Source: Caecitellus pseudoparvulus
Taxonomy: Eukaryota; Protista; Bigyra: Bicosoecida
Reading direction: 5' to 3'
NCBI GenBank assembly: GCA_965644315.1
Contig: CBFFRQ010000054.1
Coordinates: 1 to 64,000, forward strand
Length of the DNA: 64,000 nt
Position 1 is the stretch's first letter, and every line of letters begins with the position of its first letter. Below, one piece after another: positions 29,501 through 62,306 of the stretch. A program made the translations under genes and the position numbers. A model generated the notes under the pieces. It had not been told where the DNA came from. It saw only the letters and a list, made by a program, of their open reading frames with translations, and ran no database searches.

Positions 29501-32500
29501 ATGCTCAACGGCACGCCCAGCACCACGGACAGGTCCGCCGTGCTGCCCACCGGCAGCTCAGACACCAGCACCGCCACGCCGTCCGTGTTCAACGCAGACA
29601 CCACGCCCGCACCCAGGCTGGACCCGCCCACCAGCACATCCACCACCGGCAACAGACCGCTGCCCAGCACACCCGACAGGTCTGCACTGATGTTGAAGCC
29701 CGGCGCACTGCTGGCACCCGTGTGCCCCACGCTCCAGCTCACACTGATCACATCCCCGGCGTCCACAGACGTCCCGTCCACTGGCACCCACACAGGCCCC
29801 GCGCTCAGCTCCAGGTCAGGCGCACCCACCACCAGCCCGTACCCAGCCGACGACACGGCCGACCCCCCACTCGTGCTGCCAGCGCTCAGCAGACCCACAC
29901 TGCTCAGCGTCGCCACAGCCGTCACGACGTCACCTGGCACCAGCCCCGCCACGTCACGCACCGTCAGCGACACCGTCAGGTCCACAGTCTCCCCCACACT
30001 GTTGTCAGTGTCGTTGTTCACAAGCGTGCCCAGCGGCACAGTCACACTCGTGCCATCGCCAGACACGACGGCGCCCGCCGCCACACCGCCCAGGCCCCCC
30101 GACACGTCACTGGCCACACCGCCACTGCCAGACACACCCGACACGCCGGCAACCACCACCGGCGATGTGCCGCTGGTCCACCCCGACAAGTCCACAGTCA
30201 CTGACGCGCCGCTGGTCGTGCCCTCAGGCACACCCACGCTCACTGACACGTCCACGGCGCTGCCAGGGAACACCTGCCGCGGCACGGCACTGCCACTGGA
30301 CGCCGCCGTCACAGCGTCCAGGCCCCCTTCGGTCGCAGATGCGCTTGGGGTGGCAGTCAAGATTGTTGTCGTTTGGGGTGTTGATGCGTAAGTTGCTGCG
30401 GGCTGACCAGCCACAGCTGGTGCAGGATGAGAATCGTACGAGATTGAGTACTCTGCTTCGACGTGGGAACTTGCCTCGATAGAAATGTAAGCGACAAGTT
30501 CAACCTCAATAATAGTAGCTGTTCCAGCTTGAAGCATAGCAACGTTCGCTAATAGCTGCTGGTTGCCGCCTCCTCCTGGTCCACGCCCAACGCTGGCGAG
30601 GCCGTCCTGCGGATCCCCCGCAGTGTTTGCAGTGAAAACTGCCGTCCCATTCACAGAAACGGAATGTACACGGTAGTTGTCGCTTGCAAGGTTCGCATCT
30701 TGCAGCAGCAAGGCGTAAGCGTTGGCTCTGCCCGGGCCGCCTGCAGCGTTCAGGGTGAACTGTTGCGTCCAGTGGTCGCCTGCATCTATCGGACCCGTCG
30801 GGGTGCCCACAAGAACCATGGTGACATCGGGAGTTCCGATGGTGAAGGCAGCACTCGCTGATGTCACCAGCTGGAAGGGCCCGAGAGGGGGTGTGTTCGG
30901 CGCGAGGTCGCCAGTGGACGGGCGCTGAAACGAAAGCTGCGCATTGAGGCTGACGTCTGCACTGGAAGGCGCCGTGGTCGGCACAACACACTGGAAGACA
31001 ATGTCAATCGTCCTCTGAGCATCTGCAGCATTCTCCAGCACGCCGAGGTCGACAGAGAGGGAGGTGGACGTCGCGGTGGTTGCGCCAGCCACATTTGCGG
31101 CGGTCAGGCTCACGCCAGAGAAGTGTGGTGGGTTTGTCGCAGTGACATCCCCAGTTGGCTCCGTCAAGCTCACAAGGGAGTGCAGCTGCATAACATCTTG
31201 CGGGCTACCTGCATGGGAGGTGGAGGACAGCTGGACGTCAAGCTGGGCGCCGTGCAAGCGTCCCGTAAAGGGCAGCTCCACCTGCAGGGTCACTGTGATC
31301 ACCTCAGCGGGAGTGAGAACAGAGGGAGAGGCACCTGAAGCGTCTCCCACAACAGACAGCGGCTGCATGTTCGCGTCGTTCACCTGAGCCCACACCGTGG
31401 GTGCCGACGCGGAGTCTACCACTGCTGGGATGGCAAGCGGGTTGACGAAGCCCGGGTCCGTGGCGCCCATCGGCTCTCGAATATCGTAGCCGTGTGCAGC
31501 AGAAAGCACAGGTAGCGGAATGTTCTGCCCCTGGCCATCAGCTGAGCCAGTCACTTGCAGTACAACTCCAATTGTGGTTACCTGTGTTGGCACCGTCTCA
31601 AGCGTGAACACGGCTCCAGGAACACCTGAGCCGACAGCCGTGGCACGAGCTGTAGCTCCAGCCCCCGTGTTACCGTTCACAGCGATGCTTTGCACGGTGT
31701 ACGCGCCAGCAGCAAGCGTAGCGTCCACAAAGGCCACGTCCCTGACGCCCACATCCAAGGCAGGGTCTGTCCGGCGAGTCAGCGTGACTGAGTACGTAAG
31801 CGTGTCAGGTCTGAAGGTGACAGCTGTGCTCTCCGAGATGACCTGCACGCTGGAGAAGACGTCTCGTGGGTAGTACACGACCAAGTCGTCTTCATAGTAC
31901 GTGAAGACGCCGCAGGATGCCGCGTTGGAGACTGAGAAGTTGGCAAAGGGCACAAATGGGCTGCTACTGTCCAGATCCAAGTCATCGTATTCGGCCATGC
32001 GGCACCGGATCTCGGAGGAGGTGATGTAGTCTGCCCGGTCAAACACCTTGCTCGCTTCAGGCTCGCCTTCGAGCAGCAGGGCGCAATTCAAGTCTGACGA
32101 CTGTTCAAAGTCTGTACCAAGAATGGTCACGTCCAGATCCGTGCCAGTGGCATCACTCCAGAAGGACAAGGGGGACACAGACGAAATGGGCGGGGCCAGA
32201 ACGGAGGTCGGGCCAGGCACAAAGAGGTCCACGACGATGTTGCGGGAGAGCGCGTTGGCGTTGTCCCGAGCGAAGAACGTCATGGAGTAACTGCCAACCT
32301 GTCCGCCTGTCGGCGTCCAATCGAAGGTCATGGTGAGCGGGTTTGCCGTTGGCGCGTTGCTGTGGGTGAGGGTCGCGCCAGTGGGCAGGTCTGATGAGAT
32401 GAGCTCAATGTTGTCGCAGACATCGATGCCGTCCACGGCAGTGACATCGAAAGTCAGGGGCTGGTTGGAGAAGACGCAGTTTGCGACTGGGGACCCCTCA

Positions 32501-38689: not shown

Positions 38690-38982
38690 GGCGCAGACTG
38701 TGGGAACAGGGCATGCCTGGATCGGCGGCCTCCTTGGCCAGCGGACACCTGCATTGGCGCAGAGTGGGTGTATTGAATTGAGAGCAGATCCTGGCTGCTG
38801 TCGAAGGCAAGGCTGTCTCCACTGCACATACGCCCTGCATCAGTCATGTACGCAGCTCAAAAATAGCTCTTCTACAACATGATCACTGCAACATAATCGG
38901 CAACTTCATCTCTTGTCTGTGCGACTCCTCAAGTCCAACGATTTACGTGGTCCCACTGCGGAATTTGACCACACCGGTCACA

Positions 38983-44337: not shown

Positions 44338-45973
44338 AGTGCGTGCCAGCACACCGCCGCCGCGGGACGCCTCCCAGCCCCCGCACACGTGCGCCCCCCC
44401 CCTCCCTCAGTGACGCGCATTCTGGACACTCTGGAGCCTTTCATGGCGTACCTGCCCGAGGTGCAGCGCGCCAACGGCCCAGTGCGTGCCCTTGCTGACA
44501 AGCACACGTGGCCTGCCTCCGCACACCGCACTCCCACCCTCGCCGCCAGGTTCGCTTCCAAGACAAGCTGCTGTACACACTGTTCACCCTGCTGGTGTTC
44601 CTGGTCATGAGCCAGATCCCCCTGTACGGCGTGGCCATCAAGAACTCCTCCGACCCCTTCTACTGGATGCGTGTCATCATGGCCTCCAACCGGTGCGTGC
44701 GCTGCGGCACTGGCGCAGCGCCGCTGGCCGTCACCACACCTGCCCCCCCCCTCCCCTCCGCAGCGGCACCCTCATGGAGCTGGGCATCACGCCTGTGATC
44801 TCCTCTGGCATGATCGCTCAGCTGCTGGCTGGCGCCAAGATCATCGACGTGAACATGTCCCAGCCCAAGGACCAGACGCTGTTCAACGGCGCCCAGAAGC
44901 TGCTGGCCATCCTCATCACCCTGGGCGAGGCGGTCACGTACATCGCCTCGGGCGTGTACGGCGAGCTGGGCGACCTGGGCATCGTGAACGCTCTGCTGCT
45001 GCTGGCCCAGCTCATGGTGGCGGGCCTCGTCGTCATCCTCCTGGACGAGCTGCTGCAGAAGGGCTACGGCATGGGCTCCGGCATTTCCCTCTTCATCGCC
45101 ACCAACATCTGCGAGACTGTCGTGTGGAAGTCCTTCTCCCCCACCACCGTCAACGTCGGCCGCGGCCCCGAGTTCGAGGGCGCCATCATCGCCCTCTTCC
45201 ACTACCTCTTCACCCAGGACAACAAGCTCAAGGCCCTGCGCATGGCCTTCTTCCGGGAGGGCCTGCCCAACTGCGGCAACCTCATCGCCACCGTCGTCGT
45301 CTTCGTCGTCGTCATCTACCTGCAGGGCTTCAAGGTCACCCTGGCCCGCCGCCACAAGCGCTCCGGCTTCACCGCGCCCCTGGACATCAAGCTCTTCTAC
45401 ACCTCCAACATCCCCATCATCCTCCAGACCGCCCTCGTCTCCAACCTCTACTTCCTCTCCCAGCTCCTCTGGAAGCGCTATGGCACCAACCCCATCGTGC
45501 GCCTGCTGGGCACGTGGGCCGACCTGGAGTCGGGCGCCTCCCGCCCCGTCGGCGGCCTGGCGTACTACATGTCCCCCCCCCACAACCTGTACGCCGTCGT
45601 GGAGGACCCCTTCCACACGCTCTTCTACCTCACCTTCATCCTCGCCACCTGCGCCATCTTCTCACGCTTCTGGATCGAAATCTCCCCCGGCCAGTCCTCC
45701 ACCGACATGGCCCAGCAGCTGCTGAGCCAGGACTTCACCCTGGGCGGTGCCGACCGCGCCTCCAAGGAGTCCGTCAAGAAGACCCTGGACCGCTACATCC
45801 CCGTCGCCGCTGCCTTCGGCGGCATGTGCATCGGCGCGCTCTCCGTCTTCGCAGACTTCCTCGGCGCCATCGGCTCCGGCACCGGTATCCTGCTCAGCGT
45901 CACCATCATCTACTCCTACCTGGAGGAGAACCGCAAGCGCCAGCGCGAGGGCGAGAGCATCGGCATCTTCTAA
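44338..45973 (+). CDS. SEC61A: Protein translocon subunit Sec61 alpha, 4 exons; ATG apparently split by intron 44339-44410
   Basis: [86 protein letters not shown] and [11 protein letters not shown] are Sec61 alpha signatures. Confidence 0.96.
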
Positions 45974-50310: not shown

Positions 50311-52308
50311 CTAGCCCATTGCAGCTGCCCGCAGCAGCAGCATGCCACGCCGACCCTGTCGGGTGCTGGTACCGTGCCAGACAGAGTCTTTGGCAGGCTG
50401 CATAGCCACTTCACCCGCCCTCAGCCGTGCCTGAAGGGGAATGGATCGATGCCCAGTGAGGCCCAGCAGCTCGCGCACAATACCTGGATACCCTTCACTG
50501 CATGCCAGGTGAAAGCCGGCGTCAGGCTTACCCCGTGATTCGGCATGCACATCCACTTCGCGGTCATCCGTCAGGGTAAGAAGCTCCCGCACCACTCCGG
50601 CGTGCCCGTTCGCACAGGCAAGCCGGAACCCAGCCTCAGACCCGTTCCAGTCTCTTGCGTGGACATTTACTGCCCGACCAGCACCCAGGGCGAGCAGCTC
50701 CTTCACCACTGCAAGATGGCCGCGATGGCAAGCCGCCCGAAAGCCGGCATCTGGCCCTCCACTGCCACCGGCATGCACGTCTACTGCTCTTGCACCGGTC
50801 AAGGCCAACAGCTCGCGCACAACAGGCGTGCGGCCATGCATGCACGCCAGTCGAAACCCAGCTTCTGGGCCTTCAGAGTCGGCTGCGTGCACGTCAATGG
50901 CACGGTCAACGGGCAGGGCGAGCAGCTCTTGCAAGACGCCAACGTGGCCACATCGGCACGCAACAAGGAAGCCGGCCTCGAAAATGAGGCCCCCTCCCAT
51001 TGAACGCGGGCCAGTCAGCGCAAGGAGCTCTCGGACAACAGCAGTGTAGCCTTGCTGGCATGCCACTTTGAAGCCGTAGTCATCCTGGACGTGCACGTCC
51101 ACTGCCCGCCTGCCTCGCACGGCCAGGAGTTCCCGCACAATACCCGCATGGCCGAACCTGCAGGCACTGCGAAACGCAGCTTCAGGGCCATGCCTATCTC
51201 CAGCACGCACCTTGGCTTTGCGTCGCCTAGTGAGGGCGAGCAGCTCTGACACGACAGCCAAGTGACCCTTCACGCAGGCCACGCGCAGGCCAGCCTCTGG
51301 CCCAGCCTTGTCAGGAGCGTGCACATCCACTGCCCGGTCACCTGTCAGGCTCAGTAAAGCGCGCACAACGTCAGCATGACCATGTTGACAAGCTTGCCGG
51401 AAGCCAGCCTCTGGGCCGTCGCCATCTGCCGCGTGCACGTCGACTTCCCTCGCCCCGCCCAGCCCCAACAGCTCCTGCACCACAGCTGTGTGGCCTTCTC
51501 GGCAGGCCCAGCGAAAGGCAGCTTCTGATCCAGCAGCATCCATCGCATGCACATCCACCGCTTGATGCCCACACAAGGCCAGGAGTTCGCGTAGTACCTC
51601 CAAGTGCCCGCCCCCAGCCGCCCATCGAACACAGGCGTCTCCATCGACGTGCACATCCACTGCTCGAGGCCCAGTGAGGGCCAGGAGCTGCCGCACCGCC
51701 TCCAAGTGCCCACCAACGCATGCTGATCGGAAAGCCCCTTCCTGATTTGCATACACATCCACCTCGCGGTGCCCGGTAAGGGCCAGCAGCACGCGCACGA
51801 CATCCGTGTGACCATGCTCACATGCCAGACGGAAGGCAGCCTCAGGCCCGCAGGAATCACGCGCATGCACATCTACAGTCCGGTCCCCGCTCAGGGCAAG
51901 GAGTTCACGGACAACGTCAACGTGGCCGTGGGCGCAGGCCACCCGAAAGGCGTCTTCCCCCGCTGCGTGAACGTCCACCTCTCTGCTGCCACTCAATGCC
52001 AGGAGCTCGCGCACGACATCAGCGTGACCGCCCATGCAAGCCATGCGAAATCCCGCTTCTTCTAGGGCGTGGACATCCACTGCATGCCCCCCTTCGAGCG
52101 CCAGCAGCTCCAGAAGCAGTCCCACGTGCCCCGCTCTGCAAGCAGCCCAAAACCCTTGCAAGCAGTTTCTCCCGGTCAAGCAGCTCAAGACTGCCACTTG
52201 GCCATCGTCACGAGGCCGCAGAAGCTGTAACAGAGCATCTGCATCTGAACGACTGCATGCTGCTGTCCAATCTGCCACTACTGAAGCCTCGGTGCTCTGC
52301 GCAGCCAT
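50311..52308 (-). CDS. Ankyrin-repeat array gene 1 (16 repeats)
   Basis: Repeated VDVHA..E.(G/A)FR.AC..GH..VVRELLAL.G.R; shared C-cap QPAKDSVW.GT..RQGR..MLLLR. Confidence 0.92.
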   Translation of the reverse strand: MAAQSTEASVVADWTAACSRSDADALLQLLRPRDDGQVAVLSCLTGRNCLQGFWAACRAGHVGLLLELLALEGGHAVDVHALEEAGFRMACMGGHADVVRELLALSGSREVDVHAAGEDAFRVACAHGHVDVVRELLALSGDRTVDVHARDSCGPEAAFRLACEHGHTDVVRVLLALTGHREVDVYANQEGAFRSACVGGHLEAVRQLLALTGPRAVDVHVDGDACVRWAAGGGHLEVLRELLALCGHQAVDVHAMDAAGSEAAFRWACREGHTAVVQELLGLGGAREVDVHAADGDGPEAGFRQACQHGHADVVRALLSLTGDRAVDVHAPDKAGPEAGLRVACVKGHLAVVSELLALTRRRKAKVRAGDRHGPEAAFRSACRFGHAGIVRELLAVRGRRAVDVHVQDDYGFKVACQQGYTAVVRELLALTGPRSMGGGLIFEAGFLVACRCGHVGVLQELLALPVDRAIDVHAADSEGPEAGFRLACMHGRTPVVRELLALTGARAVDVHAGGSGGPDAGFRAACHRGHLAVVKELLALGAGRAVNVHARDWNGSEAGFRLACANGHAGVVRELLTLTDDREVDVHAESRGKPDAGFHLACSEGYPGIVRELLGLTGHRSIPLQARLRAGEVAMQPAKDSVWHGTSTRQGRRGMLLLRAAAMG

Positions 52309-52331
52309 GGCGTGGTGGGGTCAGATTCCGC
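52304..52331 (-). promoter_or_regulatory. Near-invariant start-proximal motif TGCGGAATCTGA(G/C/A)CCCACCA(C/G)(G/A)CCATGGC, representative copy; present at all 8 ankyrin genes
   Basis: On the + strand, gccatggcgtggtggg(g/c)tcagattccgca or a 1-2 nt variant occurs at the ATG of every array gene (52308, 53613, 54918, 56465, 57602, 59487, 60816, 61997). Confidence 0.75.
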
Positions 52332-52581
52332 AACCTGCACTTGACGCACAGCGCCCTCCGCTGTCCTGCTCAGTCTGGCAATGGCAGAAGATCCACCTGC
52401 CCCACAAGCGTGACTTTGTCCTGTATATGCATGATTGAATTTGGACTGCGCTCCGAACTGCATCCCTCTGAATGGCGCAGGCTACGTGCAGAAAGCAGGC
52501 AAGTGAGTAACCACCTGGCTCATGGCTCGCTGCCAGCTGTGCCAGGCCAGCAAGGGCCCCAACTTGCGTGCGGCTGGAGGC

Positions 52582-53613
52582 TCAGGCACGGCGGGCAGTC
52601 CGCAGCAGCAGCATGGCACACCGGCCTTGCCGAGTGCACGTGCCGTGCCAGACCGCATCTTTGGCAGGCTGCACAGCCACGTCTCCAGCAGCAAGGCGAG
52701 TTTGTCGCGGAATGGCTCGATGGCCAGTGAGGCCCAGCAGCTCACGCATGAGAGACACACGCTCCATACTGCATGCACCGCGGAATGCGTGGTCTGGCCT
52801 TCCCCACGCACAAGCATGCACATCTACTTCCCGATGCCCGCTCAGCTTGAGCAGCTCACGTACCACATCCACGTGTCCATTTCGACAGGCTTGTTGAAAG
52901 GCATGCTCAGCCTCACCAATAGGTCCTGCGTGCACATCCACTTCGCGTTCGCCGGTCAGGGCCAGCAGCTCCCGCACAACATTCACACGCCCAAGTGCAC
53001 ATGCAAGTCGGAAGGCAGCCTCGGGCACGCCTTTGGACGGGGCATGCACATCTATTTCTCGATCACCAGACAGAGCCAGCAGCTCACGCACCACAGCCAC
53101 TTTTCCATTCTGACAGGCGAGCCGGAAGGCATGGTTTGAGTCGCCCCTGAACCCCGCGTGCACGTCCACTTCACGGTGTCCGGTCAAGGCCAGCAGCTCT
53201 CGTACCACATCCACGTGTCCATTGCAGCAGGCAAACCGGAAGCCTTGCTCAGGCTCGCCTTCTGGCCCAGCATGCACATTCACTGCACGGTGCCCAGTCA
53301 GAGCAAGCAGCTCACGTAGCACATCCACGTGGCCGCAGACACACGCATCCCGAAAGCCGCGCTCATTCTCGGCGTGCACATCCACGGCCTTCTTCCCCCC
53401 CACCTTCAGCAGCTCACGCAGCAGTCCAACATGCCCCATCCGACAAGCAAGCAGAAAGCCAGCCGTAATGTCGCCACTTAAAAGCGCCCTCAGCACTGAT
53501 GCTTGGCCATGGACGGACGCTTGCAGCATGTCCATCAGCACGGTCGCCCGATGCTGGTCACATGCAGCCCTCCACTGCCCCAGAATCTCCACCCCAGCGC
53601 CCTTCGCAGCCAT
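52582..53613 (-). CDS. Ankyrin-repeat array gene 2 (7 repeats)
   Basis: Same repeat consensus and caps; close paralog of gene 3. Confidence 0.92.
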   Translation of the reverse strand: MAAKGAGVEILGQWRAACDQHRATVLMDMLQASVHGQASVLRALLSGDITAGFLLACRMGHVGLLRELLKVGGKKAVDVHAENERGFRDACVCGHVDVLRELLALTGHRAVNVHAGPEGEPEQGFRFACCNGHVDVVRELLALTGHREVDVHAGFRGDSNHAFRLACQNGKVAVVRELLALSGDREIDVHAPSKGVPEAAFRLACALGRVNVVRELLALTGEREVDVHAGPIGEAEHAFQQACRNGHVDVVRELLKLSGHREVDVHACAWGRPDHAFRGACSMERVSLMRELLGLTGHRAIPRQTRLAAGDVAVQPAKDAVWHGTCTRQGRCAMLLLRTARRA

Positions 53614-53886
53614 GGCGTGGTGGGCTCAGATTCCGCAACCCTCGCTCAAGGCAAAGCGCCCCGCTGCACTGACCAGTCTGACAGTGGCAGAAGATACACC
53701 TGCCCCTCAATCATGGCCTGGTCTTGCTCGCTCATGCTTGAATTTAGGCATTGCTCATAACTGCCACCCACTGCCTGGCGTGGTCAATGGCGGAGGGGGA
53801 GGGGCAAGCAAGTGGCGACCTCATACTTGGCTTGTGGCGAGCTGTGCCCCGCGAGTGAGAGTCCATTGCCGTGCATGTCAGTGGAA

Positions 53887-54918
53887 TCAGACATGCCAGG
53901 CAGTCCGCAGCAGCAGCATGGCACGCCGACCCTGCCGGGTGCACGTGCCAGCCCACACCGCATCCTTGGCGGGCTGCACGGCCACCTCTCCAGCGGCATG
54001 GCGTTCTTTCAGTGAGACGGCTCGATGGCCGGTGAGGCCCAGCAGCTCGCGCATGACTGACACGCGCTCCATCCTGCATGCACTACGAAATGCGCCGTAT
54101 GGCCTTCCCCACGAACGTGCATGCACATCTACTTCACGATGCCCGCTCAGCTTCAGCAGCTCCCGCACCACATCCACGCGCCCGTTCTCGCAGGCTTGTT
54201 GGAAGGCATACTCACGCTCACCAGCAGGTCCTGCGTGCACATCCACTTCGCGTTCATCGGTCAGGGCCAGCAGAAGCCGCACAATATCCACACGCCCAAG
54301 TGCGCATGCAAGTTGGAAGGCAGCCTCGGGCACGCCCTTGCACGGGGCATGTACATCAATGGCCCGCTCGCCAGTCAGCGCCAGCAGCTCACGCACCACA
54401 GCCACTTTTCCTTTCTGACAGGCGAGCCTGAAACCATGCTCCGGGTCTCCTCTGAACCCCGTGTGCACGTCCACTTCACGGTGCCCACTCAGAGTTAACA
54501 GCTCTCGCACAACGCCCACATGTCCATAGCAGCAGGCAAACCGGAAGCCTTGCTCAGGCTCGCCCTCAGGCCCTGCATGAACATCCACCTCGCGGTGTCC
54601 AGTCAGCGCCAGCAGCTCACGAAGCACATCCACGTGGCCGCAGACACACGCATCCCGAAAGCCGCGCTCATTCTCGGCGTGCACATCCACGGCCTTCTCC
54701 CCGCCCACCGACAGCATCTCTCGCAATAGCCCAACATGCCCCGTCCGACAAGCAAGCAAAAAGCCAGCCGTGGTGTCGCCACATGATAGCGCCTCCAGAA
54801 CCGATGCTCGACCATGGGCGGACGCTTGCAGGATGTCCATCAGTGTTTCCGCTCGATGCTGGTCACATGCAGCCCTCCACTGCCCCACAATGTCCGCACC
54901 GGCGCCCTTTGCAGCCAT
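53887..54918 (-). CDS. Ankyrin-repeat array gene 3 (7 repeats)
   Basis: Same consensus; C-cap identical to gene 4 except one residue. Confidence 0.92.
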   Translation of the reverse strand: MAAKGAGADIVGQWRAACDQHRAETLMDILQASAHGRASVLEALSCGDTTAGFLLACRTGHVGLLREMLSVGGEKAVDVHAENERGFRDACVCGHVDVLRELLALTGHREVDVHAGPEGEPEQGFRFACCYGHVGVVRELLTLSGHREVDVHTGFRGDPEHGFRLACQKGKVAVVRELLALTGERAIDVHAPCKGVPEAAFQLACALGRVDIVRLLLALTDEREVDVHAGPAGEREYAFQQACENGRVDVVRELLKLSGHREVDVHARSWGRPYGAFRSACRMERVSVMRELLGLTGHRAVSLKERHAAGEVAVQPAKDAVWAGTCTRQGRRAMLLLRTAWHV

Positions 54919-55193
54919 GGCCTGGTGGGCTCAGATTCCGCACCTTGCACTTGACACGAAACACCCCCCGCTGCACTGACCGGTCTGACAGTGGCAGAAG
55001 ATCCACCTGCCCCACAAGCGTAACCTAGTCCTCAATCTGCATGATTGAATTTATACTGCGCCTCAAACTTCATCCCCCTGCCTGGCGTAGTTCGTGGCGG
55101 ACGAAGGATGCCAAGCAAGCGGCGACCTCATACTTGGCTTGTGGCGAGCTGTGCCCCGCGAGTGAGAGTCCATTGCCGTGCATGTCAGTGGAA

Positions 55194-56465
55194 TCAGACA
55201 TGCCAGGCAGTCCGCAGCAGCAGCATGGCACAGCGACCCTGCCGGGTGCACGTGCCAGCCCACACCGCATCCTTGGCTGGCTGCACGGCCACTTCTCCAG
55301 CGGCATGGCGTTCTTTCAGTGAGACGGCTCGATGGCCGGTGAGGCCCAGCAGCTCGCGCACCACATCTTCATGACCTTTCTTCCAAGCAAGTCGGAAGCC
55401 AGCTTCGGGGTTTCCATCGAACGGTGCATGGACATCAACTTCACGAGCGCCGTTCAGACATAGCAGCTCCCGCACCACACCCACGCGCCCCTTGCGGCAG
55501 GCGAGACGGAAGCCTGCCTCAGGATTCCCATGAAACGCTGCATGAACATCTACCTCACGATGTCCGGTCAGCGCCAGAAGCTCCCGCACCACACCCAAGT
55601 GCCCTCCCCCACAGGCAAGTCGGAAGCCAGCCTCATGCCCATACTGATCCCCAGCATGCACATCGACCGCCCGATCACCCGTCAGTGCTAGCAGTGCGCG
55701 CACCACATCCAGGTGCCCATTGTGACAGGCGAGTCGGAGGCCTGCTTCAGGGTTTCCATTGAACGGCGCATGGACATCAACTTCACGATGCCCGCCCAGC
55801 GCCAGAAGCTCACGTACCACATCCACATGTCCATTGCGACAGGCACCTCGGAAGCCAGCCTCACGCCCATACGGATCCCCAGCATGCACATCCACGTATC
55901 GATGATCTGTCAGTGCCAGCAGCTCCCGCACCACATCCACATGCCCCTTGCGACAGGCAAGTCGAAAGCCGTACTCTGGCTCGTCTTCAGGCCCAGCATG
56001 TACATCCACCCGACGAGTACCGCCCAGCGCCAGTAGCTCTCGCACCACATCCAAGTGTCCATTTTCACAGGCAAGTATAAAGCCATACTCAGGGTTTCCC
56101 CCGCCCCAAACATGTACATCTACTTCTCGATCACCTGTCAACGACAACAGCTCGCGCACCACTTGCACATGCCCGTGCTCGCAGGCAGCTAGAAAGCCAG
56201 CCTCAGACCCGTATGGATCGCCCGCATGCACATTCACCGCACCTTCTCCAGCCAGCCCAAGCAGCTCGCGCAGCAGCCCAACGTGCCCCGACCGGCAAGC
56301 AACAAGGAAGCCAGCCGTCGTCTCGACACTTGACAGCGCCTCCAGGAGTGGCGTCTCTTCCTGGTCGGACCCCTGCACCATTTTCAGCAGCTCAGCTGCC
56401 TGCTCAGCATCACATGCAGCCTTCCATCGCGCCACCACCAACTGTCTATCGCCCTCATCAGCCAT
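55194..56465 (-). CDS. Ankyrin-repeat array gene 4 (9 repeats)
   Basis: N-terminal ~200 aa nearly identical to gene 6; C-cap as in gene 3. Confidence 0.92.
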   Translation of the reverse strand: MADEGDRQLVVARWKAACDAEQAAELLKMVQGSDQEETPLLEALSSVETTAGFLVACRSGHVGLLRELLGLAGEGAVNVHAGDPYGSEAGFLAACEHGHVQVVRELLSLTGDREVDVHVWGGGNPEYGFILACENGHLDVVRELLALGGTRRVDVHAGPEDEPEYGFRLACRKGHVDVVRELLALTDHRYVDVHAGDPYGREAGFRGACRNGHVDVVRELLALGGHREVDVHAPFNGNPEAGLRLACHNGHLDVVRALLALTGDRAVDVHAGDQYGHEAGFRLACGGGHLGVVRELLALTGHREVDVHAAFHGNPEAGFRLACRKGRVGVVRELLCLNGAREVDVHAPFDGNPEAGFRLAWKKGHEDVVRELLGLTGHRAVSLKERHAAGEVAVQPAKDAVWAGTCTRQGRCAMLLLRTAWHV

Positions 56466-56830
56466 GGCGTGGTGGGGTCAGATTCCGCAACCTGCACTTG
56501 ACGCACAACGCACTCCGCTGTCCAGCTCAGTCTGGCAATGGCAGAGGATCCACCTGCCCCACGAGCACCAACCTGTCCTGTGAACACATGATTGAATTTA
56601 GGCTTCGCTCCCAACTGGATCCCTGTGACTGGCGCCAGGCAAGGAGAATCCATCCCACCCTTGGCTCGCTGCCATCTGTGCACGGAGAGGGGCAGATCCA
56701 GGCCTTGACTGTCAGTGGGCTCAGACATGCTGGGCTGCCCGCAGCAGCAACATGGCCACGCGGCCTTGCCGGGTGCTTGTGCCAGCCCAGACCGCATCTT
56801 TGGCGGGCTGCACTGCCACCTTTCCAGCGG
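55840..56830. repeat. ~1-kb segmental duplication, second copy at ~58860-59850 (offset 3022 bp)
   Basis: Covers the 5' half of genes 4/6, the whole 255-bp spacer and the 3' end of genes 5/7; near-identical DNA. Confidence 0.9.
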
Positions 56831-57602
56831 CATGGCGTTCTTGCATGGGAATGGCTCGATGGCCGGTGAGGCCCAGCAGCTCACGGAGCACCTGTACATG
56901 CTCCCGACTGCATGCGCTGCAAAATGCTCCGTCTGCCCTTCCCCACGCCCAGGCGTGCACGTCAACTTCACGAGGCCCGCTCAGTGCCAGCAGCTCTTGC
57001 AGAACACCAAGATGGCCACCGTTACATGCAGCCCGCAATGCCCCTTCGTTGTGTGCATGCACGTCCACGGTGCGGCTCCCGCCTAAACTGAGCAGCAGAC
57101 GCACAACCTCCACATGTCCTTTCGTGCACGCCCAACGAAAACCGCACTCGTGCTCAGCATGCACGTCCACCTCTTGCTCCCCAGTCAGCGCAAGCAGCTC
57201 ACGCACCACCTCCAGCTGCCCGTAAGCACACGCCGCCCTGAAGGCGTAGTGATTGTCAGCGCCGACACTAATTGAGCGATCGCCGTCCAGATCCAGGAGC
57301 AGCCGGACGACGTCCAGGAAGCCGCTCTGGCATGCAAACCAGAAACCAAACTCTTCCCTCGCATGAACATCGACTGCAAGATTTCCCTCCAGCGCCAGCA
57401 GCTCGCGCAGCAGCCCAACGTGACCAACCTTGCAAGCAACCAGGAAGCCATCCGTTGTCTCGACGCTTGACAGCGCCTCCAGGAGTGGCGTCTCTTCCTG
57501 GTCGGACCCCTGCACCATTTTCAGCAACTCAGCTGCTTGCTCAGCATCACATGCAGCCTTCCATCGCACTACCACTGACGTACTGTCGCCCACATCAGCC
57601 AT
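56721..57602 (-). CDS. Ankyrin-repeat array gene 5 (6 repeats)
   Basis: Mostly short 34-aa repeats; N-cap shared with gene 7. Confidence 0.92.
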   Translation of the reverse strand: MADVGDSTSVVVRWKAACDAEQAAELLKMVQGSDQEETPLLEALSSVETTDGFLVACKVGHVGLLRELLALEGNLAVDVHAREEFGFWFACQSGFLDVVRLLLDLDGDRSISVGADNHYAFRAACAYGQLEVVRELLALTGEQEVDVHAEHECGFRWACTKGHVEVVRLLLSLGGSRTVDVHAHNEGALRAACNGGHLGVLQELLALSGPREVDVHAWAWGRADGAFCSACSREHVQVLRELLGLTGHRAIPMQERHAAGKVAVQPAKDAVWAGTSTRQGRVAMLLLRAAQHV

Positions 57603-57873
57603 GGCGTGGTGGGCTCAGATTCCGCAACCCGCGCTCAAGGCAAAGCGCCCCCCGCTGCACTGACCAGTCTGACGATGGCAGAAGATACACCCGCCCCTCA
57701 ATCATGGCCTAGTCTTGCTCACTCATGCTTGAATTTAGGCTTTGCTCATAACTGCCACCCACTGCCTGGCGTGGTCAATGGCGGAGGGGGAGGGGCAAGC
57801 AAGTGATCACACTTGGCGTGTGGCAAGCTGTGCCCAGGCCAGAAAGAGGCCCAGGCGGTGATCAGCAGTGAGG

Positions 57874-59487
57874 TCAGACATGCTGGGCTGCCCGCAGCAG
57901 CAACATGGCACACCGGCCTTGCCGGCTGCACGTACCATGCCAGACCGCATCCTTGGCCGGCTGCACAGCCACCTCTCCAGCCTTCAGCCGTGCCTGGAGG
58001 GGGATGGCTCGATGGCCGATGAGACCCAACAGCTCACGGAGCACGTATACATGTCCATTGCGACAGGCAAGTCGAAAGGCATGTTCAGGCACTCCTTTAT
58101 ACCCTGCATGTACGTCCACCTCTCTATGTCCAGAGAGGCCCAGCAGCTCACGCACCACACCGACTTGCCCATTGCGACAGGCGAAGAAGAATCCAGCCTC
58201 AGGCTTCCCGTTCCACCCCGCATGTACATCCACCTCACGATGCCCGCCAAGCGCCAGCAACTCTCTTACCACGTTCAAGTGCCCATTCTGACAAGCGAGG
58301 CGGAAGCCAGCCTCAGGACTACGCTCAGGACCCGCATGCACATCTACCTCACGCTCACCTGTCAGAGCCAGAAGATCTTGTACAATCTCGATGTGACCTT
58401 TGCGACAGGAATCTTGGAACCCAGCCTCTGGCACACCATCACGCCCTGCATGTACATCCACAGCACGGTCGCCCGTCAGAGCCAGCAACTCTCGAACAAC
58501 ATCCAAATGACCATTGCAACAGGCAAGCCGAAAGCCATACTCAGCGTTGCCGGCCAGCCCCGCGTGCACATCCACAAGACGGTCGCCAGAAAGGGCCAGC
58601 AACTCTCGAACAATCTCAGTGTGTCCGTAGAAACAGGCAACTCGAAAACCGTACTCTGGCTCGCCTTTGAACCCTGCATGCACATCCACGGCTCGATGCC
58701 CCGTCAAAGCCAGAAGCTCGCGCACCACTTCCAGGTGCCCGTTCTTGCAGGCATCTAGGAAGCCAGCCTCGGGATCGCCGTTGCAGGCCGCATGCACGTC
58801 GACCGCTCGGTGTCCGCTCAGCGACAGCAGCTCCCGAACCACATAGATGTGCCCATTGCCACAGGCACCTCGGAAGCCAGCCTCACGCCCATACGGATTC
58901 CCAGCATGCACATCCACGGATCGATGACCTGTCAGTGCTAGCAGCTCCCGCACCACATCCACATGCCCCTTGCGACAGGCAAGTCGAAAGCCGTACTCTG
59001 GCTCGTCTTCAGGCCCAGCATGTACATCCACCCGACGAGTACCGCCCAGCGCCAGTAGCTCTCGCACCACATCCAAGTGTCCATTTTCACAGGCAAGTAT
59101 AAAGCCATACTCAGGGTTTCCCCCGCCCCAAACATGTACATCTACTTCTCGGTCGCCTCTCAACGACAACAGCTCGCGCACCACTTGCACATGCCCGTGC
59201 TCGCAGGCAGCTAGAAAGCCAGCCTCAGACCCGTATGGATCGCCCGCATGCACATTCACAGCACCCTCTCCAGCCAACCCAAGTAGTTTACGCAGCAGCC
59301 CAACGTGCCCCGACCGGCAAGCAACAAGGAAGCCAGCCGTCGTCTCGACACTTGACAGCGCCTCCAGGAGTGGCGTCTCTTCCTGGTCGGACCCCTGCAC
59401 CATTTTCAGCAACTCAGCTGCTTGCTCAGCAGCACACGCAGCCTTCCATCGCGCCACCACCGGCTGTCTATCGCCCTCATCAGCCAT
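57874..59487 (-). CDS. Ankyrin-repeat array gene 6 (12 repeats)
   Basis: All long 38-aa repeats; 114 aa (3 x 38) longer than gene 4. Confidence 0.92.
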   Translation of the reverse strand: MADEGDRQPVVARWKAACAAEQAAELLKMVQGSDQEETPLLEALSSVETTAGFLVACRSGHVGLLRKLLGLAGEGAVNVHAGDPYGSEAGFLAACEHGHVQVVRELLSLRGDREVDVHVWGGGNPEYGFILACENGHLDVVRELLALGGTRRVDVHAGPEDEPEYGFRLACRKGHVDVVRELLALTGHRSVDVHAGNPYGREAGFRGACGNGHIYVVRELLSLSGHRAVDVHAACNGDPEAGFLDACKNGHLEVVRELLALTGHRAVDVHAGFKGEPEYGFRVACFYGHTEIVRELLALSGDRLVDVHAGLAGNAEYGFRLACCNGHLDVVRELLALTGDRAVDVHAGRDGVPEAGFQDSCRKGHIEIVQDLLALTGEREVDVHAGPERSPEAGFRLACQNGHLNVVRELLALGGHREVDVHAGWNGKPEAGFFFACRNGQVGVVRELLGLSGHREVDVHAGYKGVPEHAFRLACRNGHVYVLRELLGLIGHRAIPLQARLKAGEVAVQPAKDAVWHGTCSRQGRCAMLLLRAAQHV

Positions 59488-59742
59488 GGCGTGGTGGGGT
59501 CAGATTCCGCAACCTGCACTTGACGCACAACGCACTCCGCTGTCCAGCTCAGTCTGGCAATGGCAGAGGATCCACCTGCCCCACGAGCACCAACCTGTCC
59601 TGTGAACACATGATTGAATTTAGGCTTCGCTCCCAACTGGATCCCTGTGACTGGCGCCAGGCAAGGAGAATCCATCCCACCCTTGGCTCGCTGCCATCTG
59701 TGCACGGCGAGGGGTAGATCCAGGCCTTGACTGGCAGTGGGC

Positions 59743-60816
59743 TCAGACATGCTGGGCTGCCCGCAGCAGCAACATGGCCACGCGGCCTTGCCGGGTGCTG
59801 GTGCCCGCCCAGACCGCATCCTTGGCGGGCTGCACGGCCACATCTCCAGCATTCAGCCGTGCCTGGAGGGGGATGGCTCGATGGCCAGTGAGGCCCAGCA
59901 ATTGACGGACAACATCCGCATGGCCGTTCTTACAGGCGTATTGGAAGGCTTCTCCTTCTCGAGCATGGACATGCACGGCCTGGCCTGCGTTTCTGCTCAG
60001 CAGCTCAATAACGACGTCAACATGACCACGGGCGCACGCTGCCCGGAACCCAGCATCATCCCACACCCGCACATGCACCGTACGATCAGCGCATAAGGAA
60101 AGCAGCTCCTGAACCACGTGGACGTGGCCATTGGCGCATGCCTCGCGAAATGCGTATTCACTTCTGGCGTGCACATCAACTCGTCGGTCACCTGTCAGGA
60201 CCAGGAGCTCACGCAACACATCAAGTCGACCACAACGGGCTGCCCAACGAAATCCGCCCTCGTGATCAGCGTGTACATCAACGGCACGATAGCCGTCCAA
60301 TGACAGCAACTCTCGAACGACCGCCACTTGCCCAGCTCCGCAAGCCATCCGAAACGCAGACTCATCGCACGCATGGACGTTCATCTCGCGATCATCTGCG
60401 AGTGACAATAGCAAACGCACTACGCTTACATTGCCATTGACACATGCTGTTTGCAGTGCGCGCCCTGCCTGCACATGAACGTCCACAGAGCGGGAACCAG
60501 TCAGCTGAAGCAGCTCACGAAGCACACCCACGTGACCACCGCAGCAAGCACCCCGAAAGCCGCGCTCATTCTCAGCGTGCACATCCACGGCCTTCTCCCC
60601 CTCCACCGATAGCATCTCTCGCAACAGCCCAACATGCCCCATCCGACAAGCAACCAAGAAGCCAGCCGTCGTCTCGACACTTGACAGCGCCTCCAGGAGT
60701 GGCGTCTCTTCCTGGTCGGACCCCTGCACCATTTCAAGCAGCTCAGCTGCCTGCTCAGCAGCACATGCAGCCTTCCATCGCACTACCACTGACGTACTGT
60801 CGCCCTCATCAGCCAT
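59743..60816 (-). CDS. Ankyrin-repeat array gene 7 (8 repeats)
   Basis: Short 34-aa repeats; chimeric N-terminus. Confidence 0.92.
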   Translation of the reverse strand: MADEGDSTSVVVRWKAACAAEQAAELLEMVQGSDQEETPLLEALSSVETTAGFLVACRMGHVGLLREMLSVEGEKAVDVHAENERGFRGACCGGHVGVLRELLQLTGSRSVDVHVQAGRALQTACVNGNVSVVRLLLSLADDREMNVHACDESAFRMACGAGQVAVVRELLSLDGYRAVDVHADHEGGFRWAARCGRLDVLRELLVLTGDRRVDVHARSEYAFREACANGHVHVVQELLSLCADRTVHVRVWDDAGFRAACARGHVDVVIELLSRNAGQAVHVHAREGEAFQYACKNGHADVVRQLLGLTGHRAIPLQARLNAGDVAVQPAKDAVWAGTSTRQGRVAMLLLRAAQHV

Positions 60817-61079
60817 GGTGTGGTGGGTTCAGATTCCGCAACTTGCACTTGACACACAGCACCCTCCGCTGCATTGACCAGTCTGGCGATGGCAGAGGAT
60901 CCACCTGCCCCATAAATACGGCATAGTCCTGTACCTGCATGCTTGAATTTAGACTGCGCTCCAAACTGCCACTCGCTGCCTGAGACAGTTTGCGCTTTGG
61001 AGGCGTGCCCACCTCAAACTTCACTTGTGACCAGCTCTTCCAGGCCAGCAAGAGTTCCAACCAGCGCGCAGCTGCAGAC

Positions 61080-61997
61080 TCAAGCATGCTGGGTTGCCCG
61101 CAGCAGTACCACAGCCACACGGCCCCGTCTCGTGCTGGTACCGCCCCAGACTGCATCTTTGGCTGGCTGTACAGCAGACGCCCCAGCCGCCTTACGAGCA
61201 GCAGGAGTAGCAGCACGAGAACCGGTGAGGCCTAGCAGCTCGCGTGCAACGCCTGAGAATCCAAACTGGCACGCGGTGCGCAAGCCAGCTTCCGTCCCTC
61301 GGCCATCCTGAGCGTACACATGCGCGGTCCGGTCACCAGTCAGGCTCAGCAGCTCCCGCACTGCCGCCTCGTGGCCATTGCGGCACGCCACTCGAAAGGC
61401 AGCCTCAGGTCCATCCCTATCAGCGGCGTGCACATCCACTGCTCGGTCGCCCTCCAAGGCCAGGAGCTCGCGCATGACGGCCACATGGCCGCCCCAGCAA
61501 GCCCAGCGAAACGCGGCTTCCCACCCTCCAACATCTCTCGCATGCACGTCTATTTTCCTGTCACCCTCAAGTGCCAGCAACTCGCGCACAAGCTCCACGT
61601 GGCCGCCAGCACACGCTGCCCTGAAGGGGGTTTCGGGGCCGTCTCGATCCCTAACGTGCACATCAACTCTGCGAGCGCCAGTCAAAGACAGCAGCTCACG
61701 CACGACGGCGAGGTGGCCTTTGTGACACGCCAATCTGAGCGCAGCCCCATTCATTGCGTGCACATTAACGGCGAGCTTGCCTTCGAGCGCCAGCAGCTCA
61801 CGCAGCAGGCCGACGTGGCCCACGCGGCAAGCAGTGCAGAGGGCCTCCGCAGTGTCATTCCGAGTCAGGAAGGTCAAGTCAGGCTGCCCACCATCTGCAC
61901 TGCATCGCAAAAGGCTCATCAGGGAATCAACATTCCCAGACGAACAAGCTACCATCCAGTGCAAGTCCGGGGTTCGAAGGGAGAAAGGCTGGGCCAT
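61080..61997 (-). CDS. Ankyrin-repeat array gene 8 (6 repeats), first in transcription order
   Basis: Same consensus, more diverged caps. Confidence 0.92.
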   Translation of the reverse strand: MAQPFSLRTPDLHWMVACSSGNVDSLMSLLRCSADGGQPDLTFLTRNDTAEALCTACRVGHVGLLRELLALEGKLAVNVHAMNGAALRLACHKGHLAVVRELLSLTGARRVDVHVRDRDGPETPFRAACAGGHVELVRELLALEGDRKIDVHARDVGGWEAAFRWACWGGHVAVMRELLALEGDRAVDVHAADRDGPEAAFRVACRNGHEAAVRELLSLTGDRTAHVYAQDGRGTEAGLRTACQFGFSGVARELLGLTGSRAATPAARKAAGASAVQPAKDAVWGGTSTRRGRVAVVLLRATQHA

Positions 61998-62306
61998 GGC
62001 GTGGTGGGCTCAGATTCCGCAGCAGCAGGAGCTGCTTGCTCGCAGCGGCTCGGCGACTGGTCGAAAGCTGCTGTTTCCTGTACCAAAATGCACCACGCAA
62101 AGGCATTACTTTCAGGATCGCTTCATCTTGGCTTTACCAAACAGGTTTGGTGTGCCCATCCACATGTCCCGCACATCCACCACCGTCCTGGTGTATCACA
62201 ACTTCTTGTGCGAGACACACCCACCCTTGCGAGCCCCGCAAAAAGCAAACTTCGCGTCCAACTTCGGACTTGTACCTTCTGGTGATACTGTCGCACACCC
62301 CGCACT

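What the first reader, a model, noticed from the sequence alone, without database searches (positions are those of the whole stretch)
50311..62025. Cassette-like array of 8 intronless ankyrin genes: a natural DARPin-like diversifying library
Seen: eight co-oriented intact genes with one architecture, N-cap (W-x-x-A-C) + 6-16 repeats + conserved C-cap, 71 repeats in total. The framework (VDVHA, F.AC, GH, VVRELLAL.G.R) is fixed. Variation concentrates in the finger loop after VDVHA and in the residues around AC, and repeats come in two lengths (34 aa, or 38 aa with a 4-aa finger insert). Spacers are near-constant (273, 273, 275, 255, 271, 255, 263 bp), and there are no pseudogenes or introns, whereas most neighbouring genes are spliced. 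Known: those positions form the ankyrin binding face and are the ones randomised in DARPins. Inference: a rapidly diversifying intracellular recognition system, e.g. antiviral or anti-symbiont immunity, or substrate adaptors.
Basis: partly seen in the sequence, partly recalled or inferred. Interest (0 to 1): 0.85.

Follow-up and report, generated by a model that had tools for sequence, protein, structure and literature searches.

The report
Tandem array of capped ankyrin-repeat genes
Eight intact, head-to-tail ankyrin-repeat genes belong to a family of at least 150 such genes in a small marine protist genome; they differ mainly on the usual ankyrin binding face, but the tests run here show an old, conserved gene family, not a fast-diversifying "library".

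Summary
Eight minus-strand ORFs (293-665 aa) have spacers of 255-275 bp and 71 repeats of 34 or 38 aa, each with an N-cap and a conserved C-terminal tail. Pfam, AlphaFold2 and Foldseek all say ankyrin.

Variation sits on the finger tip and one face of helix 1. However, these are also the high-entropy positions of unrelated natural ankyrin repeats.

Selection tests:
- Framework dN/dS is about 0.12.
- Face positions give 0.6-0.8 (CI reaching 1.0). No column is significantly above 1.
- Recently diverged copies keep their face residues (0.2-0.46).

Repeats within a gene are old: 54% aa identity, with synonymous sites near saturation. Each repeat's nearest relative lies at the same ordinal position in a paralogue, so I found no sign of cassette shuffling.

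Caps and spacers are mosaic, which points to unequal crossing-over and gene conversion.

The genome holds at least 150 tails (283 candidates) on 55 contigs. The tail is almost absent elsewhere: 14 of 1.84 billion representatives.

Putative giant-virus contigs carry the same repeat subtype.

The scan had already flagged this family many times in this genome.

Verdict: a large lineage-specific ankyrin binder family evolving by birth-and-death. An immune role is unproven.

The parts
50311..52308 (-). gene 1: 665 aa, 16 repeats. No close copy elsewhere in the genome.
52582..53613 (-). gene 2: 343 aa, 7 repeats. Colinear paralogue of gene 3 (82.5% aa identity, dS 0.37).
53887..54918 (-). gene 3: 343 aa, 7 repeats. 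Its tail is 97% nt identical to the tail of gene 4.
55194..56465 (-). gene 4: 423 aa, 9 repeats. Its upstream spacer, N-cap and repeats 1-3 are 96-100% identical to those of gene 6. It is 91% aa identical to a copy on contig C166.
56721..57602 (-). gene 5: 293 aa, 6 repeats, mostly the 34-aa type. Its repeats have no close relative in the sample.
57874..59487 (-). gene 6: 537 aa, 12 repeats, all internal ones of the 38-aa type.
59743..60816 (-). gene 7: 357 aa, 8 repeats, all of the 34-aa type.
61080..61997 (-). gene 8: 305 aa, 6 repeats. It is 94% aa identical to a copy on C166. Modelled with AF2 (pLDDT 80).
52309..61079 (-). The seven conserved spacers (255-275 bp) lie within this span. Each carries an AAATTCAAKCATG box and a GGCAG-N9-CTGCC inverted repeat. 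Spacers 7-6 and 5-4 are 99% identical.
62003..62021 (-). One of eight copies of the motif TGCGGAATCTGASCCCACC, which lies 5 nt upstream of each start codon. The others are at 52314, 53619, 54924, 56471, 57608, 59493 and 60822.
   Evidence: 0 matches expected by chance; 17 copies genome-wide

Best explanation
This is one array of a large, lineage-specific multigene family: at least 150 and perhaps about 280 genes in a 30.6-Mb protist genome.

The proteins. Each is a soluble protein made only of ankyrin repeats. It is a capped solenoid of 6-16 repeats. The predicted binding groove is formed by the beta-finger tip and one face of helix 1, and it differs from paralogue to paralogue. Each member therefore probably binds its own protein partner. 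That last step is inferred.

How the family evolves (shown here): by birth-and-death.
- Tandem duplication of genes or gene blocks.
- Unequal crossing-over in the 34/38-aa repeat register, which changes repeat number.
- Patchy gene conversion of caps and spacers.

Selection (shown here):
- The framework and caps are under strong purifying selection.
- About eight face positions per repeat evolve near neutrality between old paralogues.
- Those face positions are conserved between recently separated copies.

This pattern fits members kept for stable, distinct specificities better than an ongoing arms race. The partners and the cellular role are unknown.
For: Ankyrin identity:
- Pfam.
- AF2 solenoid, pLDDT 80.
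- Foldseek top matches are FEM1B and DARPins.

Family size and restriction:
- 150 tails scored out of 283 candidates, on 55 contigs, about five of them with stops.
- The tail profile finds only 14 of 1.84 billion representative proteins.

Selection:
- 141 independent nearest-neighbour repeat pairs: framework 0.12 [0.10-0.14]; face 0.80 [0.64-1.01], or 0.61 against the overall dS.
- Whole-gene pairs pooled: face 0.48-0.70, framework 0.16, tail 0.28-0.42.
- Tree-based counts on 517 units: no column significantly above 1.
- Copies at 92% nt identity or more: face 0.32-0.46.

Age of the repeats:
- Within-gene aa identity is 0.54.
- At identical degenerate framework residues the third base agrees in 0.41 of cases, against 0.27 expected from composition.
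- Each repeat's nearest relative is at the same ordinal position in a paralogue.
- Gene 1 is unique in the genome.

Recombination: upstream, N-cap, first repeat, tail and downstream segments give discordant similarity matrices.

Structural turnover: C166 carries a copy that is 86-93% identical but has different gene and repeat numbers.
Against: - Face dN/dS of 0.6-1.0 is high, and column 12 reaches 1.24. Pooled and parsimony estimates can hide episodic positive selection and under-count multiple hits at fast sites.
- Only about a third of the family was sampled.
- No expression, partner or population data exist.
- The same repeat subtype in putative giant-virus contigs hints at host-virus interplay that a plain housekeeping-binder view does not explain.
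Confidence: 0.6

Rival explanations
1. Immune-like diversifying recognition repertoire. The family would be selected for diversity on the binding face so that it can recognise viral or symbiont proteins.
For: - Variation is concentrated on the face.
- Face dN/dS is 4-6 times that of the framework and approaches 1.
- Copy number is very high and nearly all copies are intact.
- Related arrays differ in gene and repeat number.
- Relatives occur in giant-virus-labelled contigs.
- Fungal NLR ankyrin repeats are a precedent (PMC4986451).
Against: - No column is significantly above 1.
- Recent copies and a near-orthologue conserve the face.
- Repeats are ancient, neither homogenised nor shuffled.
- No NACHT, NB-ARC, TIR, death-fold or other signalling domain is present.
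- The entropy pattern is generic to ankyrin repeats.
Confidence: 0.15
2. A family exchanged with giant viruses. The repeat subtype was either acquired from a nucleocytovirus and then amplified in the host, or captured from the host by viruses. The host copies would take part in virus-host antagonism as targets, decoys or restriction adaptors.
For: - Proteins P0027, P0029 and P0052, labelled 'viral metagenome', share the 34-aa unit of the form F-R-x-A-C..G-H..V-V-R-E-L-L-A-L..G-D-R-x-V-D-V-H-A. Identity is 43-44% and E is 1e-40, well above generic ankyrin hits.
- The end of that contig holds at least four ankyrin genes at GC 0.65-0.71.
- The nearest ESM Atlas clusters are mostly Nucleocytoviricota ankyrins (a lead only).
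- The genes are intronless.
- The layout mirrors the 148-gene tandem ankyrin arrays of Bodo saltans virus (PMC5871332).
Against: - The window is plainly host chromosome, carrying Sec61 alpha, kinase, NPR2 and lipase genes.
- Composition matches the host.
- The caps and tail are absent from the viral proteins.
- The closest hits, P0001-P0003, lie on eukaryote-like contigs.
- No NCLDV capsid match was found in the genome, although that search had no positive control.
- The viral nature of the contigs rests on a database label alone.
Confidence: 0.15
3. Adaptor family. The variable ankyrin domain picks substrates, and the invariant C-terminal tail docks all members onto one common machine, for example a ubiquitin ligase.
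For: - The tail is the most conserved part of the protein (81% column identity) and is always C-terminal.
- The top structural matches are FEM1B and FEM1C, which are CRL2 substrate receptors.
- Poxvirus ANK/F-box proteins are a precedent (cited in PMC5871332).
Against: - No F-box, PRANC, SOCS-box or VHL-box hit was found.
- AF2 models the tail as three short helices continuing the solenoid, at pLDDT about 55.
- Its sequence reads like a degenerate capping repeat, so a structural C-cap is the simpler reading.
- The FEM1B match concerns only the ankyrin fold.
Confidence: 0.1

Closest known systems
Fungal NLR (STAND) proteins with highly conserved ANK/TPR/WD repeats (Dyrka et al. 2014, PMC4986451)
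   Same: - Ankyrin repeats with a conserved framework.
- Variable positions on the concave face (inner helix and beta-hairpin).
- Repeat-number differences between related copies.
   Different: - No NACHT or NB-ARC domain and no effector domain here.
- Internal repeat identity is 54% (maximum 79%), not 85% or more.
- No repeat homogenisation or shuffling.
- Positive selection was not demonstrated.
Giant-virus ankyrin 'genomic accordion', e.g. 148 tandem ANK genes in Bodo saltans virus (PMC5871332)
   Same: - Directional tandem arrays of intronless genes made only of ankyrin repeats.
- 4-17 repeats in the virus, 6-16 here.
- Evidence of duplication and recombination.
- A related repeat subtype occurs in putative giant-virus contigs.
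   Different: - This array sits on a host chromosome next to housekeeping genes.
- Most copies are old and diverged, not near-identical.
- It has its own N-cap and tail.
- It carries no fused fragments of viral genes.
Designed ankyrin repeat proteins (DARPins, ANK-N5C libraries; PMC4308713)
   Same: - An N-cap, internal consensus-like repeats and a C-cap.
- The variable positions correspond to randomised positions 2, 3, 5, 10, 13 and 14.
- DARPins appear among the top sequence and fold matches.
   Different: - These are natural proteins.
- The repeats are 34 or 38 aa, not 33. They have a longer linker between helix 2 and the loop and either a shortened or an extended finger.
- TPLH is replaced by G/A-F-R-x.
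- Diversity arose over long evolutionary time, not by combinatorial randomisation.
Ankyrin substrate receptors of cullin-RING ligases (FEM1B/C, ASB proteins, poxvirus ANK/PRANC)
   Same: An ankyrin solenoid with a short conserved C-terminal module. FEM1B is the top Foldseek match.
   Different: No VHL-box, SOCS-box, F-box or PRANC signature was detected. The tail is lineage-restricted and has no known partner.

Membership tests
Ankyrin repeat superfamily (Pfam clan Ank: PF12796, PF00023, PF13606) | Sequence match above the curated cut-off | tested here: met
   Ank_2 scores 57-145 bits against a cut-off of 27.3 for all eight proteins.
Ankyrin repeat superfamily (Pfam clan Ank: PF12796, PF00023, PF13606) | Helix-turn-helix plus beta-hairpin/loop units stacked into a solenoid | tested here: met
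   The AF2 model of gene 8 has pLDDT 80 and pTM 0.78, with paired 8-residue helices and finger strands in each unit. Foldseek gives 310 PDB matches at E <= 0.001; the 50 listed are ankyrin-repeat proteins.
Fungal-type NLR with hypervariable ANK repeats | Central NACHT or NB-ARC NTPase domain | tested here: not met
   Only ankyrin families were hit in Pfam.
Fungal-type NLR with hypervariable ANK repeats | High internal repeat conservation (85% or more) | tested here: not met
   Within-gene repeat identity averages 0.54 and peaks at 0.79 in aa; the nt mean is 0.59.
Fungal-type NLR with hypervariable ANK repeats | Positive selection at concave-face positions | tested here: inconclusive
   Face dN/dS is 0.6-0.8 with a CI up to 1.01. 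The best column is 1.24 at P = 0.035 uncorrected. No likelihood site model was available.
Poxvirus/NCLDV ANK-PRANC (F-box-like) proteins | C-terminal PRANC or F-box-like domain | tested here: not met
   Pfam gives no hit in the tail. The tail profile finds only 14 proteins in 1.84 billion; the members examined carry ankyrin repeats.
CRL substrate receptors FEM1 / ASB | VHL-box or SOCS-box after the ankyrin domain | tested here: not met
   No such Pfam hit. The FEM1B structural match covers only the ankyrin part.
Giant-virus ANK accordion arrays | Directional tandem arrays of ankyrin-only genes with variable repeat number | tested here: met
   Eight co-oriented genes with 6-16 repeats. Other arrays in the genome are also co-oriented.
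Giant-virus ANK accordion arrays | Located in a viral genome (its periphery) | tested here: not met
   The window carries Sec61 alpha, a protein kinase, NPR2 and a lipase. No NCLDV capsid match was found in the genome, though that search lacked a positive control.

The most novel reading that the evidence does not exclude
The capped ankyrin family of at least 150 members is this protist's intracellular recognition repertoire, engaged with giant viruses that carry the same unusual repeat subtype. The host proteins would act as sensors or restriction adaptors, and the viral copies as captured decoys or antagonists. Specificity would be encoded on the finger and helix-1 face and renewed by unequal crossing-over.
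Probability: 0.15. Interest if true: 0.8.

Novelty: new member of a known kind. Interest (0 to 1): 0.4.

Why it matters
If the family were shown to recognise viral or foreign proteins, it would be an innate-immunity-like repertoire built from ankyrin repeats alone, in a poorly sampled protist lineage, and it would be mirrored in that lineage's giant viruses.

As things stand, it is a clean and unusually large example of birth-and-death evolution of a repeat-protein family. It involves at least 150 intact genes, roughly 1% of a 30.6-Mb genome. The evidence is explicit that a conserved framework combined with a variable face can arise without rapid diversification.

It is also a natural source of stable 34- and 38-aa ankyrin scaffolds with short and long fingers.

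Tried and rejected
- **Organism identity.**
  - Sec61 alpha is only 60-67% identical to any named eukaryote.
  - A paper search for the metagenome sample ids found nothing.
  - I left the organism unnamed.
- **'Cassette' idea.** I looked for repeats shared between genes at shifted positions, and for near-identical donor copies. Each repeat's nearest relative is at the same ordinal position in a paralogue, and gene 1 has no close copy. I rejected this reading.
- **Tail as a known docking domain.** Pfam found nothing. The profile search found the tail in only 14 proteins; the members examined carry ankyrin repeats. AF2 gives low-confidence helices. I read the tail as a probable capping module.
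- **Endogenous giant virus.** There was no NCLDV capsid hit, but the control genomes gave no hit either, so this negative is weak.
- **Whole-gene colinear pairs.** Only six useful pairs turned up among the 81 sampled ORFs, so I added analyses at the level of single repeats.
- **Likelihood site models.** PAML and HyPhy were not available. I used NG86 pair counts and a parsimony count in the style of SLAC.
Full report
**1. The observation**

The region holds eight intact ORFs on the minus strand:

| Gene | Coordinates | Length (aa) |
|---|---|---|
| 1 | 50311-52308 | 665 |
| 2 | 52582-53613 | 343 |
| 3 | 53887-54918 | 343 |
| 4 | 55194-56465 | 423 |
| 5 | 56721-57602 | 293 |
| 6 | 57874-59487 | 537 |
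| 7 | 59743-60816 | 357 |
| 8 | 61080-61997 | 305 |

- All eight score far above the Pfam Ank_2 cut-off.
- Anchoring on the A-C..G-H..V-V..L-L motif gives 16, 7, 7, 9, 6, 12, 8 and 6 repeats, 71 in all. Every spacing is 34 or 38 aa.
- Each protein opens with an 81-aa segment holding W-x-x-A-C and a first repeat. Each ends with a last repeat followed by a tail; the 48-aa C-terminal segment aligned here has 81% mean column identity.
- Two small corrections apply. And the neighbours are not all spliced, because a 7232-aa ORF at 11575-33273 is uninterrupted.

**2. Where the variation lies**

- Entropy over the 71 repeats peaks at unit columns 1-3, 12, 15 and 16 (3.2-3.6 bits). Columns 5, 8, 20, 29 and 31 are intermediate. 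A13, C14, G17, L25 and L26 are almost invariant.
- The AlphaFold2 model of gene 8 (pLDDT 80, pTM 0.78) places the elements of a 38-aa unit as follows:
  - columns 2 and 5 are the two strands of the finger, with columns 3-4 at its tip;
  - columns 8-15 form helix 1;
  - columns 16-18 form the turn;
  - columns 19-26 form helix 2.
- Columns 8, 12 and 15 follow an i, i+4, i+7 spacing, so they lie on one face of helix 1. Variation is therefore on the canonical ankyrin binding face.
- In the 34-aa unit the finger is lost and helix 1 is longer.
- Foldseek and phmmer against the PDB return FEM1B, designed ankyrins and DARPins.
- The same positions (2, 3, 5, 10 and 13 in canonical numbering) carry the highest entropy among repeats taken from unrelated natural ankyrin proteins. 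That is why designers randomise them (PMC4308713). The entropy pattern alone therefore does not distinguish a 'library' from any set of ankyrin repeats.

**3. The family in the genome**

- The window is bases 1-64000 of a 439-kb contig in a 30.6-Mb assembly of 215 contigs.
- A profile of the tail finds 150 scored matches out of 283 candidates, on 55 contigs. Only about five have stops.
- So there are at least 150 members, perhaps about 280, and nearly all are intact.
- In 81 sampled ORFs the architecture is the same: cap, repeats, tail. Members run up to 1852 aa, and Pfam finds only ankyrin domains.
- The arrays are co-oriented.
- The tail occurs in only 14 of 1.84 billion representative proteins. 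Most are unnamed metagenome proteins already found as family homologues.
- Those metagenome scaffolds carry the same tandem arrays with 256-bp spacers.
- The organism is an unnamed, poorly sampled protist. Its Sec61 alpha is only 60-67% identical to any named eukaryote.
- This scan had already flagged the family many times in this genome.

**4. Selection**

I split 547 repeat units out of the sampled genes and formed 141 disjoint nearest-neighbour pairs at 80-99% nt identity. NG86 counts give the following.

| Class | dN/dS |
|---|---|
| Framework | 0.12 [0.10-0.14] |
| A-priori face columns (1, 2, 3, 5, 12, 15, 16) | 0.80 [0.64-1.01] against their own dS; 0.61 [0.52-0.72] against overall dS |
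| Face columns, pairs at 92% nt identity or more | 0.32-0.46 |

- Seven colinear whole-gene pairs were pooled, including gene 2 with gene 3, and genes 4 and 8 with their C166 copies. The result was face 0.48-0.70, framework 0.16, tail 0.28-0.42 and N-cap 0.55-0.60.
- A near-orthologue from a metagenome relative (dS 0.057) shows a single replacement at face positions.
- A parsimony count on a FastTree of 517 distinct units gives column values of 0.83-0.91 at columns 3, 5, 8 and 15. Column 12 is 1.24 (P = 0.035 uncorrected, not significant over 38 columns). Values are below 0.3 across the framework.
- So there is a clear excess of replacements on the face, but it stays within what neutrality allows, and the face is conserved between recent copies.
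- Caveats: counting methods under-correct at fast sites, recombination blurs trees, and only about a third of the family was sampled.

**5. Age and mode of evolution**

- Repeats within one gene are on average 54% identical in aa (maximum 79%) and 59% in nt.
- At identical four- or six-fold degenerate framework residues the third base agrees in 0.41 of cases, against 0.27 expected from composition. Synonymous sites are thus close to saturation.
- It follows that the framework is held by purifying selection and not by homogenisation.
- Each repeat's nearest relative sits at the same ordinal position in a paralogue. Genes 1, 5 and 7 have no relative above 77% nt for any repeat in the sample.
- Gene 1 has no other match in the genome at E <= 1e-100.
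- This argues against cassette shuffling and against rapid turnover of the members.

Recombination between members is nevertheless evident. Different segments give discordant similarity matrices:
- spacers 7-6 and 5-4 are 99% identical;
- the N-caps of genes 4-7 are 91-96% identical;
- the first repeat of gene 3 groups with gene 7 (92%);
- the tail of gene 3 groups with gene 4 (97%).

Contig C166 holds a copy of part of the array that is 86-93% identical but differs in gene and repeat number. I cannot tell whether it is an allele or a paralogue. Metagenome scaffolds also differ in content, but short-read assembly of repeats may be chimeric.

**6. The tail and the spacers**

- With a 55-sequence alignment, AF2 models the tail as three short helices continuing the solenoid, at pLDDT about 55.
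- Its sequence resembles a degenerate repeat with an insertion, so a structural C-cap is the simplest reading.
- No F-box, PRANC, SOCS-box or VHL-box signature was found.
- Every ATG is preceded by TGCGGAATCTGASCCCACC; there are 17 copies genome-wide.
- The seven inter-gene spacers share an AAATTCAAKCATG box and a short inverted repeat.
- These are probably promoter, 5' UTR and 3'-end signals that were duplicated along with the genes. That is inference.

**7. The link to viruses**

- Proteins labelled 'viral metagenome' (P0027, P0029, P0052) share the unusual 34-aa unit at 43-44% identity and E of about 1e-40, well above generic ankyrin hits. Their tails are different.
- The end of that contig carries at least four ankyrin genes at GC 0.65-0.71.
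- The nearest ESM Atlas clusters are mostly Nucleocytoviricota ankyrins. This is a lead only.
- The layout recalls the 148 tandem ankyrin genes of Bodo saltans virus (PMC5871332).
- The window itself is host chromosome.
- No NCLDV capsid was found in the genome, but that search had no positive control.
- Exchange between host and virus is plausible. Its direction is unknown.

**8. Verdict**

The face is variable and evolves several-fold faster than the framework. But 'rapidly diversifying', 'cassette-like' and 'immune' are not shown, and several results point the other way.
- The best explanation is a large lineage-specific family of ankyrin binders evolving by birth-and-death with unequal crossing-over and gene conversion. 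Each member appears to be kept for its own partner.
- The closest known systems are fungal NLR ankyrin repeats (PMC4986451) and giant-virus ankyrin arrays. Defining features of both were tested and not met: there is no NTPase domain, repeat identity is below 85%, and the array is not in a viral genome.

Noticed in passing
window 11575-33273 (-): A single uninterrupted ORF of 7232 aa. It has weak Pfam hits to SIBA-E_N (an integrin-beta-like adhesin of Dictyostelium) and to a spondin-type TSP1 domain. Its middle 8 kb (about 22000-30000) is a compositional plateau: GC 0.70, GC skew -0.29, rich in G/V/S/A. It is probably a giant extracellular adhesin.
   Followed up: partly
window 38957-38975 (+): A near copy of the ankyrin genes' pre-ATG motif (TGCGGAATTTGACCACACC) lies 9 nt before the ATG of an unrelated gene. 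That gene's product also begins M-A-D and seems to have an intron after about 41 codons. A looser form of the motif may be a general start-site element of this organism.
   Followed up: partly
L001 = G000:C166:1-6331: This whole 6.3-kb contig is an 86-93% identical partial copy of the array. It holds five genes of 305, 347, 423, 267 and at least 314 aa, and lacks counterparts of genes 7 and 5. It is either a very divergent haplotype or a segmental duplicate.
   Followed up: partly
L021/L022 = G000:C149:68000-76000 and C199:6000-14000: Two contigs carry the same four-gene ankyrin array at 99.8-100% protein identity. They are likely haplotigs or an assembly duplicate. Within the array two 519-aa genes are 98% identical, which indicates a very recent tandem duplication.
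   Followed up: partly
L010 = G000:C54:236804-242362 (+) and other loci: Some family members carry a further C-terminal extension after the tail, ending in a basic K-R-P-R-P.. segment with S-P sites that looks like a nuclear localisation signal. One member is 1852 aa with about 47 repeats.
   Followed up: partly
G000 contigs C19, C198, C12, C170, C190, C136: Tail matches also occur in very short open frames (45-143 aa). These could be gene fragments, spliced genes or small tail-only proteins.
   Followed up: no
L031, L030 (ENA metagenome scaffolds, ZHEN20-1 ... METAG): Environmental scaffolds carry tandem genes of the same family with 256-bp spacers. One gene is nearly identical (dS 0.057) to a gene on G000 contig C48, while its neighbours differ. 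So a close relative of this organism occurs in that metagenome.
   Followed up: partly
L034/L035 (contigs holding P0029): The end of a contig labelled as viral metagenome has at least four ankyrin genes of the same repeat subtype, several ORFs without any Pfam hit, and GC of 0.65-0.71. The contig recurs in seven metagenome assemblies.
   Followed up: partly
window 44486-45973 (+): The main exon of Sec61 alpha is only 60-67% identical to any named eukaryote, and 83-89% identical to unnamed metagenome proteins. The host belongs to a poorly sampled lineage.
   Followed up: partly
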